A stretch of 32,000 bases of DNA, from NCBI RefSeq assembly GCF_000400465.1, contig NW_008806281.1, forward strand, positions 390,001-422,000. Direction: 5' to 3'. How positions within the stretch are numbered: position 1 is the first letter of the stretch; each line of letters begins with the position of its first letter. Below the pieces are notes generated by a model. It was not told the origin of the DNA. It made no database searches and saw nothing but the letters and a program-made list of their open reading frames with translations. The position numbers were made by a program, and so were the translations under genes. Positions 2,767-16,923 of the stretch are shown one piece after another. The DNA comes from Wallemia ichthyophaga EXF-994 (Eukaryota; Fungi; Basidiomycota).

Positions 2767-3789
2767 ATGATAAAAAATCGCAGTATAGAATTCAAGCTTT
2801 TGATTGACCAGTATAATAAATCTAAATCGAAGCAAGCTCAACCTGCGCAGCCCATCACGCGCTCCACCTTCTCAACATTGAGCTTTAAAGTTTCAAGAGA
2901 TATTCAATCAACGACGTCAAAGCTGCAGAAATTAACTCAATTGATAAATAGAAAGAGCTTATTCGATGATAAGCAGCTTGAGATAAACGTACGTTGGGCT
3001 GAGTTTCATGCGTTTGACGTGGTCTAATCAAAGCTAAAGGAACTCACTTACATTATAAAACAAGATTTAGCAGATCTAAACTCTCAAATATCTCAACTAC
3101 AATCAACGTTGAATCAGTCTAACCAGAACTCGCAACACTCACAACATCAATCGAATGTAGTCATCTCACTTCAGAACACTCTAGCCAACACTTCCTTCTC
3201 CTTTAAAGATGTCCTGGAGCTAAGGACTCAGAATATTAAAAAGTCTAAGCAAAGGACTGAAAAATTTTCAACCATATCCAACAAGGATACGAATCAAGAT
3301 TTTAAACAATCTGATTCACCTTTATATACTAACAATATACCCTCTTCGTCGACTCACAAAAGAAGACAACGAAATTCAGACGTTTTAGCGTTGGATCTTG
3401 ATGAACCCAACACCACAAATCAACAGTCTCAGCAAATGTCGATGATTGGTAGACAGGACAACTACCTCAATGAGAGATCATCAGCTATTGATACAATAGA
3501 AAGTACTATCTCAGAACTTGGACAGATATTTAGCCAGCTGAGTTCGATGGTGGCTATTCAAGGCGAAACTGTGCAAAGGATTGACGCAGATGTGCATGAT
3601 ATAAGTGACAATGTATATGGAGCACAATCTGAGTTATTGAAGTACTACGAATCGATCAAATCGAATAGAATGTTGATGTTCAAGTTATTTGGAGTTATAA
3701 TAATCTTTGTGGGTTGAAATAAGCAGACAAGAGTAAGCAACTAACAATAAGCAATCATATAGTTCTTAGTATTCATACTAGTAACTTAA
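2767..3789 (+). CDS. SED5: cis-Golgi Qa-SNARE syntaxin-5 (introns 2989..3039 and 3709..3762)
   Basis: N-terminal KNRSIEF motif, Habc segments (LQKLTQL..RKSLFDD, ELTYIIKQDL), SNARE motif ERSSAIDTIESTISELGQIFSQLSSMVAIQGETVQRIDAD, and C-terminal TM (spliced GVIIIFFLVFILVT*). An alternative in-frame acceptor exists at 3033. Confidence 0.93.
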
Positions 3790-3929
3790 ATAAAACTACA
3801 AACAACTTGATCAAACCAATCAAACAAAAAACTCAGAAACAGTGCATTGTATAGTAATTGAATAGGAATGAATATTAATACCTTTAACAAAATACCTAGA
3901 CTATTATCATAATAATTCTCAATTAACAT
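3786..3929 (-). CDS. Possible small hydrophobic protein (47 aa from ATG 3929; frame open from at least 3974)
   Basis: Stop-free frame in a region of about 27% GC (hand count). Its stop overlaps the SED5 stop in a TTAA palindrome. No homology recognised, and it may be a composition artefact. Confidence 0.25.
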   Translation of the reverse strand: MLIENYYDNSLGILLKVLIFIPIQLLYNALFLSFLFDWFDQVVCSFI

Positions 3930-3995
3930 TTTCTTGTCATCAAAAAAATTCTCGTAATTCTCCCTTGAGCTCAAACTCTAACAGCACACAACGAA

Positions 3996-12349: not shown

Positions 12350-12783
12350 ACGCGTCTGTATTTCTAGGACTCAATGTATTTATCACTAGTGAATTACGTT
12401 GGACGCGTTAAAATGAAAAGTTTCATGTCTATTCTCGTACCAGAAGATTTTAACCGGGGAGCTGTGTTTCGCTTAAATTAAGGATTCAAGGGGTAAGGAG
12501 GGATATATGAAAGCACAGCAATAAACCGTCTTGCAAATAAATAACGATGATTACGATGAAATCGAATATAAGAAATAAACGCGTTAAGAAGAATCTGCGG
12601 GTCAGGTTCCTACTCGATCCGTCAACGGACAGGTCAATACATGTCGGAGTTAGTGATGAGCGGTGCATTACATTGCATTTAGCTGACAATCGATAGTATG
12701 ATAAAGGTGGATATGATAATAAGCGTCGGGCAGTAAATACGTCTGTATACACCCATGCTCCCGCTGCATACTCGACGACGCGT
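12350..12783. promoter_or_regulatory. Cluster of four ACGCGT (MCB-like) hexamers
   Basis: Exact ACGCGT at 12350, 12403, 12579 and 12778. Function is not demonstrated. Confidence 0.3.
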
Positions 12784-13038
12784 TCAAGATGCTACATATG
12801 CGACAGTTATAGGCGCGGAACTAGCAGTGCAGGATCACTGAGCAGCAGTTCACAGTCACACAAACGGAGTGCAGGATCATCCATCGGTGGCAGTCTGGGC
12901 AATCACAGCAATCACAACAGCTTTTACAGCCATATCAACAATAGTGCAGGATCACTCAACAGAATACCACCATACTACGATTACTACACTGGCATCGTCT
13001 CGAGTCTGACACCGCAGATGCACGTATACTATTGCTAG
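12547..13038 (+). CDS. Spliced hypothetical protein (147 aa; intron 12649..12696), absent from the ORF track
   Basis: ATG 12547 gives a 34-codon exon. The intron GTTAGT..CTGAC..TAG (48 bp) is followed by a 114-codon exon in frame, ending at TAG 13036-13038. Confidence 0.6.
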
Positions 13039-13087: not shown

Positions 13088-13933
13088 CTATTTGTTTCTC
13101 ATTAAGCGCAAACCTTGTGTGCGTTTGGCTAGCCTGTAGAGCAACCCAGTAGTGAACAAGCTGAGGGAGAACCACGTGAATGCGTAAACAGCATGCTGAT
13201 TGCGCAGTTCAATTTTGGATGGTCTACCAACAGGCACACCTTGTGCCAATCTAGAGCCAGGCAAACCATCGTAAATCTCGTCAATCAGAACGTTTTCGAT
13301 GGGAGTGTTAGTGAGTGAGGAAAGATGTGTTGCTATAGCAGGTACATCGACCCAGAGCCAAACATTATCAGCGGGGATGTTATCGGGGGTGAACATGTTT
13401 CTCTTCTGGGAGACTCTGAGCATGCCGACAATGTCTACATCCGTGCTGGTGTTCCCGAGTGAGCTAAGAAAGCTATCGAGATTGTCATTGTGTATGAAAC
13501 CTCTATTGACGAGTACTGTCTGTCCGTCGTGTCTTAGTAGTGGCTGTATAACATGCACACCAATCTCGCCATCAAGTGTACGTGGACCGACGGCTATGGC
13601 GTGGTTTAAGAGAGTGCCACCAGCTGTAACCTTCCTATACTCAAATTCTGGGAGGACCGAAGTATCAATGTGCTTCGGAAGAGGTAGTGGATCTTGACCA
13701 AGCTTATCATCCAATTCTGCGATTAGATTTAATTTCCAGTCTAATCGCCGCACTTGCCAGAAACCAAGATAAAGAGTGAAAATCGGGATGGCAGATAGTG
13801 CTAGCAAGCCAGCAGTGGGAAATTGGAAAGACTTTTGGTTCTTATACTTTGGCGGAGATTGATATCTAATTGGTAATTTTGCGTTATTTAGAGTACGAGT
13901 TGATCGCAACGCTGCTCTAATCATACCGGCCAT
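13088..13933 (-). CDS. SHY1: SURF1-family cytochrome c oxidase assembly protein
   Basis: Arg-rich presequence-like N-terminus, then LYLGFWQVRRLDWK, EFEYRKV, VLVNRGFI, FTPDNIP, ELRNQHAVYAFTWFSLS. Start is at 13933 or at 13924 (Met4). Confidence 0.93.
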   Translation of the reverse strand: MAGMIRAALRSTRTLNNAKLPIRYQSPPKYKNQKSFQFPTAGLLALSAIPIFTLYLGFWQVRRLDWKLNLIAELDDKLGQDPLPLPKHIDTSVLPEFEYRKVTAGGTLLNHAIAVGPRTLDGEIGVHVIQPLLRHDGQTVLVNRGFIHNDNLDSFLSSLGNTSTDVDIVGMLRVSQKRNMFTPDNIPADNVWLWVDVPAIATHLSSLTNTPIENVLIDEIYDGLPGSRLAQGVPVGRPSKIELRNQHAVYAFTWFSLSLFTTGLLYRLAKRTQGLRLMRNK

Positions 13934-14453
13934 GAACGGAGCAGAAAGCGAGACGAGTAATGACGCAAAAGCGGTGCAGACGTTTAGAGAGGTGGGATTG
14001 AATGCGATTTGACGCGTACACTCACATGCGTACTTGTAGGCCTTTAGACTGATCGATCACGATAACGATTCAAAACTGAGTTATACGGATATAGAGAATA
14101 CACTTTCTTCAGTGGGAATTGGATTGGATGAAGGATTCACAACAGAATTATTAAACTCGCGTCCTGACAAATCAAACAGCCAAGAGCTTACGTTTCCAGT
14201 GTTTCTGACTATGTTCAAAGAAAAACTCGATAAAATGGACAATAGCGGAGTGTTAGCCGAGAGCTTTGAAAGCTTCGATGGGGATTTCAAAGGCTATTTA
14301 AATGCAAATGAGCTGCTGAGGGCGGTAGAGGAGTTCGGTGATGTGGGTGAGCTTTCCAAGCTAATTGAATCAGGCACTTTCACCGATAGAATGGGTAATT
14401 TCCATTATAGCAAGTGGATAGAATCAATGAGCGTGAATCAATCAACTCAATAG
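13932..14453 (+). CDS. EF-hand calmodulin-like / myosin regulatory light chain-like protein (157 aa; intron 13992..14039)
   Basis: The splice gives VQTFREAFRLIDHDNDSKLSYTDIENTLSSVG, then ELTFPVFLTMF, FESFDGDFKGYLNANEL and GNFHYSKW. Confidence 0.85.
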
Positions 14454-14500
14454 TAACACTGCAACTTGTATCGATAAAAAACGCGTATAAATATTGTATT

Positions 14501-15040
14501 CTAATCAGTAATCAACTCCTGACACTGCCAATCCTCATAACTACCATCTGGCAAGTATCTTCTCACAATCAACGGGACTTTCTTAGATGACAACTCTTTT
14601 ATTGCTATTTGCAGAGGATCAGTCTCACCAGCCTCAATTGGAACGAGAACAGGTGCGTTCATAGAAATTTGCAATGCACGTGTACCTAGAATACGTGCCC
14701 TTTCGTATTTAGTCATATATGGAGTTGTCACTCTGTCTTCATTTGCGACTGTAGCCGTGGATCCAGTGATCGCAGCACCAGAGGTAACAACATTTGAATC
14801 ATCTTCCATTGGCGCAACGTTATCTTCCTCTTCCTTGAAACATTTTAGTCTTTCTCACTTCAATTACGCGTACAAACCATTCCAGCATCCTGATAGAAGC
14901 TTGTAGCCTTTAGAGAGAGCGTTCACGTATTCAAAGACTACTCACTCTTGTCCTTCATCTACCTATTAACATTAATCAGCTATGTTCCCCCCGCAATTCC
15001 TTACTCCCACCATTCCATCCACATCCTCGTTATCTGACAT
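14501..15040 (-). CDS. RPB6: RNA polymerase I/II/III shared subunit Rpb6 (three short upstream exons)
   Basis: [27 protein letters not shown]...[12 protein letters not shown]. The upstream ATG gives MSDNEDVDG, matching the usual acidic Rpb6 start. Micro-exon boundaries (about 36, 17 and 22 nt) are inferred. Confidence 0.95.
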
Positions 15041-15096
15041 AATGATAGTATTTACTCAAGGAATTCATGGATAAAAATACAATCTAATAAATATAT

Positions 15097-16923
15097 TCAA
15101 ACATTTTCACTCTTATTTACACTCTTGCGTACGCTAAACAACCTCCTCAACTTGCTTCCCATCTTTGAAGTTTTTCTCTCCAGTTTCTTTGGTGGGTTTG
15201 AAGGTGTTGGCGGTGTTGAGGGTGTTGAAGGTGCTTTGTTTGTATTAAAGGCTGCGTTTGTAACACCCACAGGTGAAACAGGCGACATACTCCTGTTACG
15301 CAGTGAAGTCGTCTTCCCTTCACTATCAGTAACTTTCAACGCCGGAAAGGGCGATAACTTGGGATCACTATCGTAAAACTCCTTATTCGATTGTATTGAT
15401 GGCTTGTTTTTTATTATTCTGAATGATCCAAATGATCTCTGTGATTTTACCTTTTTATGCTTCCCCTTACCCATCTCTGACTGTGCCAACTTTGATTTTG
15501 GTAGTGTTGTCATTGATCTAGTAAGCATAGCCTGTGACTTTGCATTATCGGCGTTGCGTGCTGCCAAATGTATTTGTGGTTGTGGCTTTAACTCTGAAGA
15601 TTTGCGTGTTGCACTGTATGCACCGTTTATTTGTTCAGTCAAGGGTATATCTTCATCTATAGTTGGTTGTATTGATTGCATTGGTTGTATATCCGAGGTG
15701 TTAGTTGGCTTTTCTTCATTTTCCTTTCCGTTTCCTTTGTCTGTCTCTATCTCTTTAAAACGATCACCTTGGTCCTCCTCTTCCTTATGCTCCTCCATAT
15801 CACCCATTCCGATTCCAAATTCATTAACAAATTGAGGTCCGAGTAACTGAGCCAACCTGTCAGGACCTAAAGTCTTGCGCAGTTCATTTATATATGCTGA
15901 AGAAGTGAAATGAATCTGTCTTCTACGTCTTTGTGCTGCTTTGTTTGAAATTTCAGAGTTAATTATATCAAGTTGATCAACTTTATCAACATGATCAACC
16001 TCCTCAACTTCCTCATAAGTGATATCATCATCACTATCCTCAATATCACTATTGGCGGGTGATAAACGTGTTGAAGTGTTTAACATTCTCTCATACTCAA
16101 ATTTATCACCATTTCCAGCAGATGAAGGTGAACCTATAGAATTTGTGGACTCTAAGCTTTGCTTACGTTCCCTTTTTGGAGTGGGTGGAACAAGAAGAAG
16201 GTTTGAAGGGAGAATTTGAGGAGGCTTAGAAGAGTTGAGGAGGTTATCAAAGTTGCTCAAGTCAAGGTCACCCAATGAACTTCTCCTCTTTTGAGTAGTT
16301 TGTGTTGGTGGTTGTCTACGACTACCTAAACGCTTAAGCATGTTAGCTCTTGCAGCTTGTCTAGAATCATCTCTGCTACCACGACCACCAATTGCACCAG
16401 TGACGGTGTTACTCCTCAGTAAGCGAGAATTTTCATCATTGTTGAGTAAAGCACCATTAACGAGCTTGTTGAAGGCGTTTACTCTTGCAGTTGCACTGTT
16501 TGATCTAGATAAAAGGGAGTTACCATGTTTTGATAGCAATTGATCTTGTAATTGAGTGAGAGTGAGTAGTTGTTTCTTAGTAGGCTTTTGAGGGGAGTGA
16601 GGGTTGACGAGTTGGAGAGTGAGTGAGTTATCTAAGGTTTCTGGATTTTCTGCTTTATCGTTATCGCCTTGCTTGTCATCTTCACCGTCGCTGTTTGTGG
16701 ATTGTACACTATCCAACACTGGTTCGTAGATAGTGGGTGAATAGGGTGAGTTTGGAGCGAAATTGCTAGTATCTAATCTACTATCATTACTAGTATCTTT
16801 ACTAATATCCCTACTAGCATCTAAATTACTATCATTGCTACCACCAGAAACATTCCTCCTAGGAATAGAAGCAGCCCTTCTAAGCTTATCAACAGCTAGC
16901 GCTCTAACATTCTTGTTATCCAT
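15097..16923 (-). CDS. Hypothetical low-complexity Ser/Asn/Lys-rich protein (608 aa)
   Basis: Uninterrupted 1.8-kb ATG-initiated ORF. No domain recognised. Confidence 0.8.
   Translation of the reverse strand: MDNKNVRALAVDKLRRAASIPRRNVSGGSNDSNLDASRDISKDTSNDSRLDTSNFAPNSPYSPTIYEPVLDSVQSTNSDGEDDKQGDNDKAENPETLDNSLTLQLVNPHSPQKPTKKQLLTLTQLQDQLLSKHGNSLLSRSNSATARVNAFNKLVNGALLNNDENSRLLRSNTVTGAIGGRGSRDDSRQAARANMLKRLGSRRQPPTQTTQKRRSSLGDLDLSNFDNLLNSSKPPQILPSNLLLVPPTPKRERKQSLESTNSIGSPSSAGNGDKFEYERMLNTSTRLSPANSDIEDSDDDITYEEVEEVDHVDKVDQLDIINSEISNKAAQRRRRQIHFTSSAYINELRKTLGPDRLAQLLGPQFVNEFGIGMGDMEEHKEEEDQGDRFKEIETDKGNGKENEEKPTNTSDIQPMQSIQPTIDEDIPLTEQINGAYSATRKSSELKPQPQIHLAARNADNAKSQAMLTRSMTTLPKSKLAQSEMGKGKHKKVKSQRSFGSFRIIKNKPSIQSNKEFYDSDPKLSPFPALKVTDSEGKTTSLRNRSMSPVSPVGVTNAAFNTNKAPSTPSTPPTPSNPPKKLERKTSKMGSKLRRLFSVRKSVNKSENV

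What the first reader, a model, noticed from the sequence alone, without database searches (positions are those of the whole stretch)
13922..13934. Divergent SHY1 and EF-hand genes start from one palindromic CATG
Seen: CATG at 13931-13934 is the SHY1 ATG on the minus strand (13933..13931) and the EF-hand gene ATG on the plus strand (13932..13934). It is the only in-frame ATG for the EF-hand exon 1 back to an in-frame TGA at 13860, and exon 1 is needed to form the FREAFRLID EF-hand. Even if SHY1 starts at Met4 (13924), only 7 bp separate the start codons. Inference: there is no intergenic promoter, each promoter and 5' UTR lies inside the partner's coding sequence, and the mRNAs must overlap head-to-head. 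This implies transcriptional interference, mutually exclusive firing, or near-leaderless mRNAs.
Basis: partly seen in the sequence, partly recalled or inferred. Interest (0 to 1): 0.72.

Follow-up and report, generated by a model that had tools for sequence, protein, structure and literature searches.

The report
Two fungal genes starting back-to-back
In the salt-loving fungus Wallemia, a mitochondrial assembly gene (SHY1/SURF1) and a myosin light-chain gene point away from each other with start codons 0-11 bases apart in every relative examined, so each gene's control region must lie inside the other; this is a real, extreme case of a known arrangement, and how it is transcribed is still unmeasured.

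Summary
CATG at 13931-13934 holds the first ATG of the SHY1/SURF1 ORF (minus strand, 13933..13931) and the ATG of a two-exon EF-hand gene (plus strand, 13932..13934). The window matches Wallemia ichthyophaga, a basidiomycete with a very compact genome.

The EF-hand gene is a myosin regulatory light chain. Its 157-aa spliced model is confirmed by the intronless W. mellicola orthologue.

The near-zero spacing is conserved in five lineages:
- CATG overlap in W. ichthyophaga, W. hederae and a Logan relative.
- 7-10 bp in W. mellicola.
- 11 bp in a distant metagenomic relative, where in-frame stops with no AG before either ATG exclude upstream coding exons.

Two outgroup basidiomycetes lack the pairing. 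Other divergent pairs nearby are 81-192 bp apart.

The most likely reading is an interlocked head-to-head pair with crossed, overlapping 5' ends, an extreme product of genome compaction. No transcript data could be reached, so interference, mutual exclusivity and leaderless mRNAs all remain untested.

One new lead: TACGCGT is the only motif of 6 or more bases shared by all four EF-hand first introns. It lies about 80 bp upstream of the SHY1 ATG.

This is a new member of a known kind, of moderate interest.

The parts
13931..13934 (.). CATG shared by the two start codons (SHY1 ATG 13933..13931 on the minus strand; EF-hand ATG 13932..13934 on the plus strand)
   Evidence: The same overlap occurs in L006/L007/L008 (W. 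ichthyophaga strains), L005 and L001.
13088..13933 (-). SHY1/SURF1 coding sequence, 281 aa, with no intron in this species
   Evidence: Pfam SURF1 E=1.9e-47 over residues 49-259. It is 78% identical to W. hederae SURF1-like protein and 63% to W. mellicola. GenBank models are 281 aa or 278 aa.
13922..13924 (-). SHY1 Met4, the alternative start; the Met-Ile pair aligns with the W. mellicola start (MMIF/MIF)
   Evidence: It has a purine at -3 (G here, A in W. mellicola), whereas Met1 has T at -3 (read from the sequences). It is used as the start in the annotation of GCA_004918895.1.
13932..13991 (+). EF-hand (myosin regulatory light chain) exon 1, 20 codons: MNGAESETSNDAKAVQTFRE
   Evidence: Residues 11-20 align to the first helix of RLC and calmodulin structures. 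The N-terminus is conserved in L005 and W. hederae. Three of the 23 differences from another strain over 8.5 kb fall in this exon.
13992..14039 (+). EF-hand intron 1, 48 nt, GTGGGA...TAG, with an in-frame TGA at 14010
   Evidence: An intron sits at the same position in L005 (48 nt), W. hederae (47 nt) and L009 (61 nt). It is absent in W. mellicola, where FRETFRLID is contiguous.
14012..14018 (.). ACGCGTA (reads TACGCGT on the other strand), an MluI/MCB-like motif about 80 bp upstream of the SHY1 ATG and 80 bp downstream of the EF ATG
   Evidence: It is the only k-mer of 6 or more bases shared by the four introns, in either orientation. A shared 6-mer arose in 12 of 20000 shuffles. It lies 22-28 nt from the 3' splice site in all four introns.
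14040..14453 (+). EF-hand exon 2, through the stop codon at 14451-14453
   Evidence: The spliced 157-aa product is 99% identical to GenBank E3P77_02665.
13860..13862 (+). In-frame TGA that closes the EF-hand frame upstream of its ATG
   Evidence: The equivalent stops lie at -36 (L005), -72 (W. hederae), -135 (W. mellicola) and -18 (L009).
14501..15040 (-). RPB6 (RNA polymerase subunit) gene, tail-to-tail with the EF-hand gene; 47 bp between stop codons
   Evidence: In W. mellicola the two coding sequences overlap by 15 bp at their 3' ends.
12547..13038 (+). Small gene tail-to-tail with SHY1; 49 bp between the coding sequences
   Evidence: Gene tables.

Best explanation
This is a real, anciently fixed, interlocked head-to-head gene pair in the Wallemia lineage. 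SHY1/SURF1 (cytochrome oxidase assembly) and a myosin regulatory light chain gene diverge from start codons 0-11 bp apart.

Shown: both genes are intact and under purifying selection, neither has room for an upstream coding exon, and the spacing is conserved across five lineages.

Inferred: no DNA lies between the coding sequences, so each gene's transcription start and core promoter must sit inside the other's transcription unit. For the light-chain gene that is the weakly constrained presequence-coding part of SHY1. For SHY1 it is the light chain's N-terminal exon 1 and intron 1, where a conserved TACGCGT lies. The two start sites are then crossed and the mRNAs overlap antisense over their 5' leaders, probably by tens of nucleotides.

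Also inferred: the arrangement is the extreme end of the general compaction of this genome. It persists because any break or insertion at the junction would cut both genes from their promoters.
For: Gene models
- SURF1 domain, E=1.9e-47.
- A profile of the five Wallemia EF proteins hits myosin regulatory light chains best (E=2.3e-24, against 3e-19 for the best plain calmodulin chains).
- The reference genome names the gene 'putative myosin regulatory light chain'.
- The intronless W. mellicola orthologue reads QSFRETFRLID, which proves the splice.

Functionality
- EF pN is 0.13-0.19 against pS 0.65-0.8.

Conserved junction
- Overlap or 7 bp in W. ichthyophaga, L005 and W. hederae.
- 7-10 bp in W. 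mellicola.
- 11 bp in L009.

No upstream coding exon
- L009 has in-frame stops at -18 (EF) and -30 (SHY1) with no AG before either ATG.

Lineage-specific
- In Auricularia and Rhodosporidiobolus the upstream neighbour of SURF1 is more than 1 kb away, and no EF gene is present.

Compaction context
- Other local divergent pairs are 81, 108, 188 and 192 bp apart.
- Convergent neighbours are 47 and 49 bp apart.
- Only 56 bp separate the upstream gene's stop from the RPB6 ATG.
- In W. mellicola the EF gene overlaps RPB6 by 15 bp at its 3' end.
- Coding sequence covers 73.6% of the genome (PMC3849046).

Candidate element
- TACGCGT is the only shared intron motif.
Against: - No transcript evidence of any kind was reachable. 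The GenBank strain annotations used no RNA data (PMC6738226).
- Synonymous divergence shows no dip in SHY1 codons 1-45 or in EF exon 1. Any embedded promoter there is therefore not sequence-specific enough to leave a footprint.
- EF exon 1 is a local polymorphism hotspot.
- Upstream-AUG depletion next to the junction is not significant (P=0.17 and 0.89).
- W. mellicola has lost the intron. Its only nearby ACGCGT is about 250 bp into the EF coding sequence.
- ACGCGT is generally over-represented in this genome (17 against 4.5 expected).
Confidence: 0.6

Rival explanations
1. Near-leaderless or very short-leader mRNAs. The two start sites are back-to-back within, or a few nucleotides either side of, the 0-11 bp junction. 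The transcripts then barely overlap, and ribosomes initiate on leaders shorter than about 12 nt.
For: The geometry allows it. Spacing is kept at 0-11 bp in all lineages. Both genes have a second nearby option or a reasonable context: SHY1 has two close ATGs, and the EF ATG has G at -3. Very short leaders are known in other compacted eukaryotic genomes (own knowledge).
Against: Neither start matches the mammalian short-leader element TISU. By inspection, -3 is T or G rather than A, and only 3-5 of 9 flanking positions fit. Short leaders normally cause leaky scanning in fungi (established knowledge). Nothing is known of such mRNAs in basidiomycetes.
Confidence: 0.15
2. Overlapping transcripts that exclude one another. 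Only one promoter fires per template at a time, giving toggle-like, anticorrelated expression.
For: Crossed start sites within about 100-200 bp would make the two initiation complexes and the polymerases compete (inference). The two gene functions, respiration and cytokinesis, are unrelated, so co-regulation is not expected.
Against: There are no expression data. Overlapping head-to-head pairs are a recognised class elsewhere, and both correlated and mutually exclusive expression have been reported for head-to-head pairs (PMC1487180). Both genes are housekeeping-type and both are under purifying selection.
Confidence: 0.12
3. SHY1 is transcribed from a remote promoter. Either a non-coding 5' exon lies beyond the EF gene, so that the EF gene sits inside a SHY1 5'-UTR intron, or SHY1 is made by read-through from RPB6. 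Only one promoter would then be near the junction.
For: The frame antisense to the EF gene is open for 41, 157 and 125 codons upstream of the SHY1 ATG in three lineages. MAKER produced 1016-aa fusions of the upstream 608-aa protein, RPB6 and SHY1 in several strains.
Against: The fusion model cuts off the conserved RPB6 C-terminus and adds unconserved Ser/Leu-rich antisense sequence. The antisense frame is open for only 9 codons in L009, with no AG acceptor before the ATG. Those annotations used no RNA evidence. A purely non-coding upstream exon cannot be excluded from sequence alone.
Confidence: 0.07
4. Annotation artefact. The EF-hand gene starts elsewhere or is decaying, so there is no true start-codon clash.
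For: The reference genome annotates a different 145-aa model that starts at ATG 13960 in another frame. The gene is not called at all in the W. hederae and W. mellicola loci fetched.
Against: The 145-aa model lacks the first EF-hand helix. The 157-aa model aligns from residue 11 to RLC structures. Its start Met is at the homologous place in five lineages, the splice is confirmed by the intronless orthologue, and pN is far below pS.
Confidence: 0.03

Closest known systems
Mammalian SURF1-SURF2 bidirectional pair of the surfeit locus
   Same: The SURF1 homologue is again one partner of a very tight, evolutionarily conserved, divergently transcribed pair (PMC1487180 cites it as a classic conserved case).
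   Different: The partner here is a myosin light chain, not SURF2. The pairing arose independently within the Wallemia lineage, since outgroup basidiomycetes lack it. Here the start codons themselves abut or overlap, whereas in mammals it is the transcription starts that lie close together (own knowledge).
[quoted passage not shown] 2006, PMC1487180)
   Same: Divergent orientation, conserved linkage, and transcripts expected to overlap at their 5' ends.
   Different: In vertebrates the overlap is of UTRs or first exons, with start codons usually far apart. Here the coding sequences start 0-11 bp apart, so promoters must lie in the partner's coding sequence or intron. Transcript overlap is inferred here, not observed.
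Overlapping transcription in compacted eukaryotic genomes (microsporidia, nucleomorphs)
   Same: Intergenic DNA is lost until the control and UTR sequences of one gene lie inside its neighbours. The local context here fits: convergent gaps of 47-49 bp, a 56-bp tandem gap, and a 15-bp 3' coding overlap in W. mellicola.
   Different: Wallemia is a free-living basidiomycete with a 9.6-Mb genome and normal intron numbers (PMC3849046). This pair is an outlier even in its own neighbourhood, where other divergent gaps are 81-192 bp. The comparison rests on my own knowledge of that literature, not on a test here.
MluI cell-cycle box (ACGCGT) bound by MBF-type factors in fungi
   Same: The conserved intron motif contains the exact ACGCGT core and is palindromic, so it could serve both genes.
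   Different: No evidence of binding or of cell-cycle regulation exists. The motif is over-represented throughout the window, including in coding sequence. Its constant 22-28 nt distance from the 3' splice site could instead point to a role in splicing.

Membership tests
Head-to-head (bidirectional) gene pair | Adjacent genes on opposite strands in divergent orientation | tested here: met
   SHY1 is on the minus strand and the EF gene on the plus strand, diverging from 13931-13934.
Head-to-head (bidirectional) gene pair | Transcription start sites no more than 1000 bp apart (definition in PMC1487180) | not testable with these tools
   No TSS data are available. The start codons are 0-11 bp apart, so start sites more than 1 kb apart would need leaders longer than either neighbouring gene allows (inference).
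Head-to-head (bidirectional) gene pair | Overlapping subclass: the two transcripts overlap | not testable with these tools
   No RNA-derived contigs or expression tables for these genes were found.
Head-to-head (bidirectional) gene pair | Linkage conserved across species | tested here: met
   Five lineages keep the pair and the spacing. It is absent in two outgroups.
SURF1/Shy1 family | SURF1 domain over most of the protein | tested here: met
   PF02104, E=1.9e-47, residues 49-259, profile positions 2-205 of 205.
SURF1/Shy1 family | Conserved N-terminal and C-terminal membrane segments flanking the domain | tested here: met
   The alignment with fungal Shy1 proteins shows invariant residues in IPIFTLYLGxWQVxRLxWK and in RNQHAVYAxTWFSLS. 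No transmembrane predictor was run.
Myosin regulatory light chain | Four-EF-hand-fold protein closer to regulatory light chains than to calmodulin | tested here: met
   In the profile search the top seven chains are all RLCs (89.8-86.7 bits). The best calmodulin-containing chain scores 81.5 bits and plain calmodulins about 73 bits. The FLTMFKEKL segment matches RLC FLTMFGEKL.
Myosin regulatory light chain | First EF-hand loop is the metal site, with Asp at loop position 12 | tested here: met
   The loop reads DHDNDSKLSYTD in the sequence. It aligns to DQNRDGFIDKED of the RLC. That this is an RLC hallmark is from my own knowledge.
Myosin regulatory light chain | Binds the second IQ motif of myosin II; phosphorylatable N-terminal Ser/Thr | not testable with these tools
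   Ser and Thr are present in exon 1 (ESETS), but there is no alignable site, and the N-terminus varies between lineages.
MCB/MBF-regulated promoter | ACGCGT core near the regulated start | tested here: met
   The motif is at 14012-14017 and is conserved in four introns.
MCB/MBF-regulated promoter | Cell-cycle-periodic expression dependent on the site | not testable with these tools
   No expression data are available.
TISU-type short-leader mRNAs | Match to SAASATGGCGGC around the start codon | tested here: not met
   By inspection: SHY1 reads GTTCATGGCCGG (5 of 9 flanking positions, T at -3) and the EF gene reads GGCCATGAACGG (3 of 9).

The most novel reading that the evidence does not exclude
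The pair is a conserved interlocked-promoter switch. Each start site lies inside the other gene's first 100 bp, so the two initiation complexes compete for the same DNA. The conserved palindromic TACGCGT in the light-chain intron acts as the shared control element. The result would be anticorrelated expression of a respiratory-chain assembly factor and a cytokinesis light chain, or else efficient translation of near-leaderless mRNAs in a basidiomycete.
Probability: 0.12. Interest if true: 0.6.

Novelty: new member of a known kind. Interest (0 to 1): 0.36.

Why it matters
It is a clean natural test case for how RNA polymerase II promoters work when no intergenic DNA is left. Two essential-type genes have kept start codons 0-11 bp apart while synonymous sites between the lineages became saturated, and one partner's short first intron offers the only non-coding space.

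There is also a practical consequence, because the junction defeats gene predictors. GenBank holds at least five different models for these two genes:
- EF gene of 145 aa and of 157 aa.
- SHY1 of 278 aa and of 281 aa.
- A 1016-aa fusion.

The light-chain gene is not called at all in the W. hederae and W. mellicola loci fetched. Curators of compact fungal genomes should expect such cases.

Tried and rejected
- **Upstream coding exon for either gene:** rejected. In L009 in-frame stops lie at -18 and -30 with no AG before the ATGs.
- **Reference 145-aa EF model (ATG 13960, other frame):** rejected. It lacks the first EF-hand helix.
- **1016-aa and 720-aa fusion models:** rejected as MAKER artefacts made without RNA evidence.
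- **DNA-level constraint beyond coding near the junction:** none found. There is no dip of synonymous divergence in SHY1 codons 1-45 or in EF exon 1.
- **Upstream-AUG depletion as a proxy for leader length:** not significant.
- **ACGCGT enrichment in non-coding sequence:** not significant by a crude open-frame proxy (4 of 17, p=0.23).
- **Search for transcript evidence:** nothing usable.
  - The cluster members include no RNA-derived forms.
  - The supplements of the genome paper hold no entry for these genes beyond a Pfam count.
  - One metagenome scan with the W. mellicola junction 20-mer gave a single unrelated chance hit, L014.
- **TISU-like context:** not matched.
- **Bacterial promoter and terminator scan:** not run, because it does not apply to a fungus.

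Full report
**1. The observation**

The window reads ...ATCATACCGGCCATGAACGG... with CATG at 13931-13934.
- On the minus strand an ORF of 281 aa runs 13933..13088. It has a full-length SURF1 domain (E=1.9e-47). Upstream of its ATG the frame stays open for 41 codons with no ATG, GTG or TTG.
- On the plus strand the ATG at 13932 is the first in-frame ATG after the TGA at 13860. The frame reads MNGAESETSNDAKAVQTFRE and then meets GTGGGA, with an in-frame TGA at 14010.
- Removing 13992-14039 (48 nt, GT..AG) joins it to AFRLIDHDND... and gives a 157-aa EF-hand protein ending at 14453.
- SHY1 Met4 lies at 13924..13922, 7 bp from the EF ATG.

**2. Organism and gene identities**

- The spliced protein is 99% identical to a GenBank protein of Wallemia ichthyophaga.
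- The SHY1 ORF is found exactly in three W. ichthyophaga assemblies, including the reference strain EXF-994.
- The window is identical to two of those assemblies, including the reference, over +-300 bp around the junction.
- W. ichthyophaga has a 9.6-Mb genome in which coding sequence covers 73.6% (PMC3849046).
- A profile of the five Wallemia-lineage EF proteins hits myosin regulatory light chains best (E=2.3e-24, 89.8 bits). The best plain calmodulin chains score about 73 bits.
- The metal-binding loop DHDNDSKLSYTD and the FLTMFKEKL segment align to RLC counterparts.
- The reference genome also calls the gene 'putative myosin regulatory light chain'.

**3. Is the gene model right?**

GenBank holds competing models:
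- EF gene of 157 aa that overlaps a 281-aa SURF1 by 2 bp (GCA_004918625.1).
- EF gene of 157 aa with a 278-aa SURF1 starting at Met4 (GCA_004918895.1).
- EF gene of 145 aa in the reference, starting at ATG 13960 in another frame.
- Fusions of 1016 aa that run from the upstream 608-aa gene through RPB6 into SHY1, treating most of the EF gene as an intron.

The strain annotations were made with MAKER and used no RNA evidence (PMC6738226).

Comparative data settle the question. In W. mellicola the orthologue has no intron and reads MDESGKTKQIQSFRETFRLID. This is exactly the join predicted for the 157-aa model. In a distant relative (ENA contig L009) the intron sits at the same codon boundary. The EF gene is under purifying selection, with pN 0.13-0.19 against pS 0.65-0.8 between the three closest lineages.

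**4. Conservation of the junction**

| Lineage | Arrangement at the junction |
|---|---|
| W. ichthyophaga strains | CATG overlap |
| Logan-assembled relative (L005) | CATG overlap |
| W. hederae (L001) | CATG overlap |
| W. mellicola (L002-L004) | CAT CAT CGACGTT ATG: 7 bp from the first SHY1 ATG, 10 bp from the second |
| ENA contig L009 | CAT TGACGTTGATA ATG: 11 bp |

Further points:
- The JGI model of W. mellicola uses the first SHY1 ATG (267 aa). The strain annotations use the second (266 aa).
- L009 SHY1 is 44-48% identical to the Wallemia species, and the contig keeps the RPB6 - EF - SHY1 - methyltransferase order.
- L009 is the cleanest case. The EF frame is closed by a TGA at -18 and the SHY1 frame by a stop at -30. 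No AG dinucleotide lies between either stop and its ATG, so no upstream coding exon can be spliced in.
- In two outgroup basidiomycetes, Auricularia subglabra and Rhodosporidiobolus ruineniae, the upstream neighbour of SURF1 is more than 1 kb away. No EF-hand gene is detectable there by tblastn.

The pairing therefore arose within the Wallemia lineage and has been kept since. The conserved feature is the near-zero spacing. The palindromic overlap is its form in one sub-clade.

**5. Context**

- Other divergent pairs in the annotated neighbourhood have start-to-start gaps of 108, 188 and 192 bp. One more is about 81 bp by ORF calls.
- Compaction is general. The stop-to-stop gap is 47 bp between EF and RPB6, and 49 bp separate the SHY1 coding sequence from its downstream neighbour.
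- Only 56 bp separate the 608-aa gene's stop from the RPB6 ATG.
- In W. mellicola the EF coding sequence overlaps the RPB6 coding sequence by 15 bp at the 3' ends. There the EF gene has no private flanking DNA at either end.

Control regions lying inside neighbouring genes must therefore be routine in this genome. This pair is the extreme.

**6. Where could the promoters be?**

I looked for footprints.
- Synonymous divergence shows no dip in the first 45 SHY1 codons or in EF exon 1.
- Within the species, 3 of the 23 differences between two strains over 8.5 kb fall in the 60-nt EF exon 1.
- Upstream-AUG-free runs next to the junction are no longer than expected from the rest of the antisense sequence (P=0.17 and 0.89).

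Whatever promoter function sits in the coding parts therefore leaves no detectable sequence-level footprint.

There is one exception. The four EF first introns are otherwise unalignable, but all contain TACGCGT/ACGCGTA. It is the only k-mer of 6 or more bases that they share. A shared 6-mer arose in only 12 of 20000 shuffles. Here it lies at 14012-14018, about 80 bp upstream of the SHY1 ATG, and 22-28 nt from the 3' splice site in all four introns.

ACGCGT is the core of the fungal MluI cell-cycle box (own knowledge), and it is palindromic. The caveats are these:
- The hexamer is over-represented throughout the window (17 against 4.5 expected).
- It is not clearly enriched in non-coding sequence.
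- It also occurs in RPB6 intron 3.
- W. mellicola lost the intron, and its nearest copy is about 250 bp into the EF coding sequence.

It is a lead, not a finding.

**7. Mechanism**

- Shown: two functional genes, start codons 0-11 bp apart, no upstream coding exons, conserved across the lineage.
- Inferred: crossed transcription starts with 5' leaders that overlap antisense. The EF promoter would lie in the SHY1 presequence-coding region. The SHY1 promoter would lie in EF exon 1 and intron 1.
- The pair would be locked together because any break severs both genes from their promoters. This fits the reported conservation of head-to-head pairs (PMC1487180). It also fits the finding that short intergene distance is the strongest predictor of conserved linkage in yeasts (PMC2258174).
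- Rivals are near-leaderless mRNAs, mutually exclusive firing, and a remote SHY1 promoter with a non-coding 5' exon. None can be excluded without RNA data, and none was reachable.

**8. Comparison and verdict**

The closest known things are:
- the classic SURF1-SURF2 bidirectional pair, a coincidence of partner since the Wallemia pairing is independent;
- overlapping transcription in compacted genomes.

This is a new, well-conserved and unusually extreme member of that kind. One GenBank strain annotation already shows the 2-bp overlap implicitly, but I found no discussion of it in the papers searched. The inference of no intergenic promoter is sound. The claims of interference or exclusivity are untested.

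Noticed in passing
window 14012-14018; also 14481-14486, 14866-14871, 12350-12408; L005 3267-3272 and 3772-3777; L001 3920-3925; L009 2159-2164: ACGCGT occurs 17 times in the window against 4.5 expected (0 of 100 shuffles reach 17). Besides the conserved copy in EF intron 1, copies lie in RPB6 intron 3, in the EF/RPB6 3' spacer (also present in L005), and twice upstream of the small gene at 12547. Whether it is a transcription-factor site, a splicing signal or a codon-usage effect is open.
   Followed up: partly
window 13088-16923; GenBank W. ichthyophaga strain annotations (P0124, P0126, P0139): Gene predictors disagree at this locus. Models include fusions of 1016 aa (608-aa protein + RPB6 + antisense of EF + SHY1) and 720 aa (608-aa protein + RPB6), and a mis-spliced 145-aa light chain in the reference. 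The light-chain gene is not called at all in the W. hederae (L001) and W. mellicola (L002-L004) loci fetched.
   Followed up: yes
L004 3586-3600 (W. mellicola): The light-chain coding sequence (3990..3586, minus strand) and the RPB6 coding sequence (ending at 3600, plus strand) overlap by 15 bp tail-to-tail. In this species the light-chain gene has no intergenic DNA at either end.
   Followed up: yes
window 13941, 13957, 13970 (EF exon 1), compared with L006: Three of the 23 differences between two W. ichthyophaga strains over 8.5 kb fall in the 60-nt exon 1. Two change amino acids (A4T, S9N). The light chain's N-terminal extension therefore looks weakly constrained.
   Followed up: partly
window 13088-13933, compared with L005 2258-3194, L001 4001-4931 and L004 4001-4846: SHY1 has no intron in W. 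ichthyophaga. It appears to have two short introns in L005 and W. hederae (931-nt gene for 280 aa) and one in W. mellicola (846 nt for 266 aa). Intron content has turned over while the junction stayed fixed.
   Followed up: partly
window 13934-14056 minus strand; L005, L004 equivalents: The frame antisense to the light-chain gene, continuous with the SHY1 ATG, is open for 41 codons here, 157 in L005 and 125 in W. mellicola, but only 9 in L009. It encodes unconserved Ser/Leu-rich sequence. It is probably a codon-composition by-product, and it probably explains why predictors fuse genes here.
   Followed up: yes
SHY1 N-termini: window 13799-13933; P0143; P0006: The segment before the first membrane helix shrinks from about 75-90 residues in outgroup fungi to about 45 in W. 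ichthyophaga, about 30 in W. mellicola and about 10 in L009. The presequence may have been trimmed as the junction tightened. How the shortest form is targeted to mitochondria is unclear.
   Followed up: no
window 15041-15096: Only 56 bp separate the stop of the 608-aa gene (15097) from the RPB6 ATG (15040) on the same strand. The RPB6 promoter must also lie inside its upstream neighbour. RPB6 has three short introns in its first 230 nt.
   Followed up: partly
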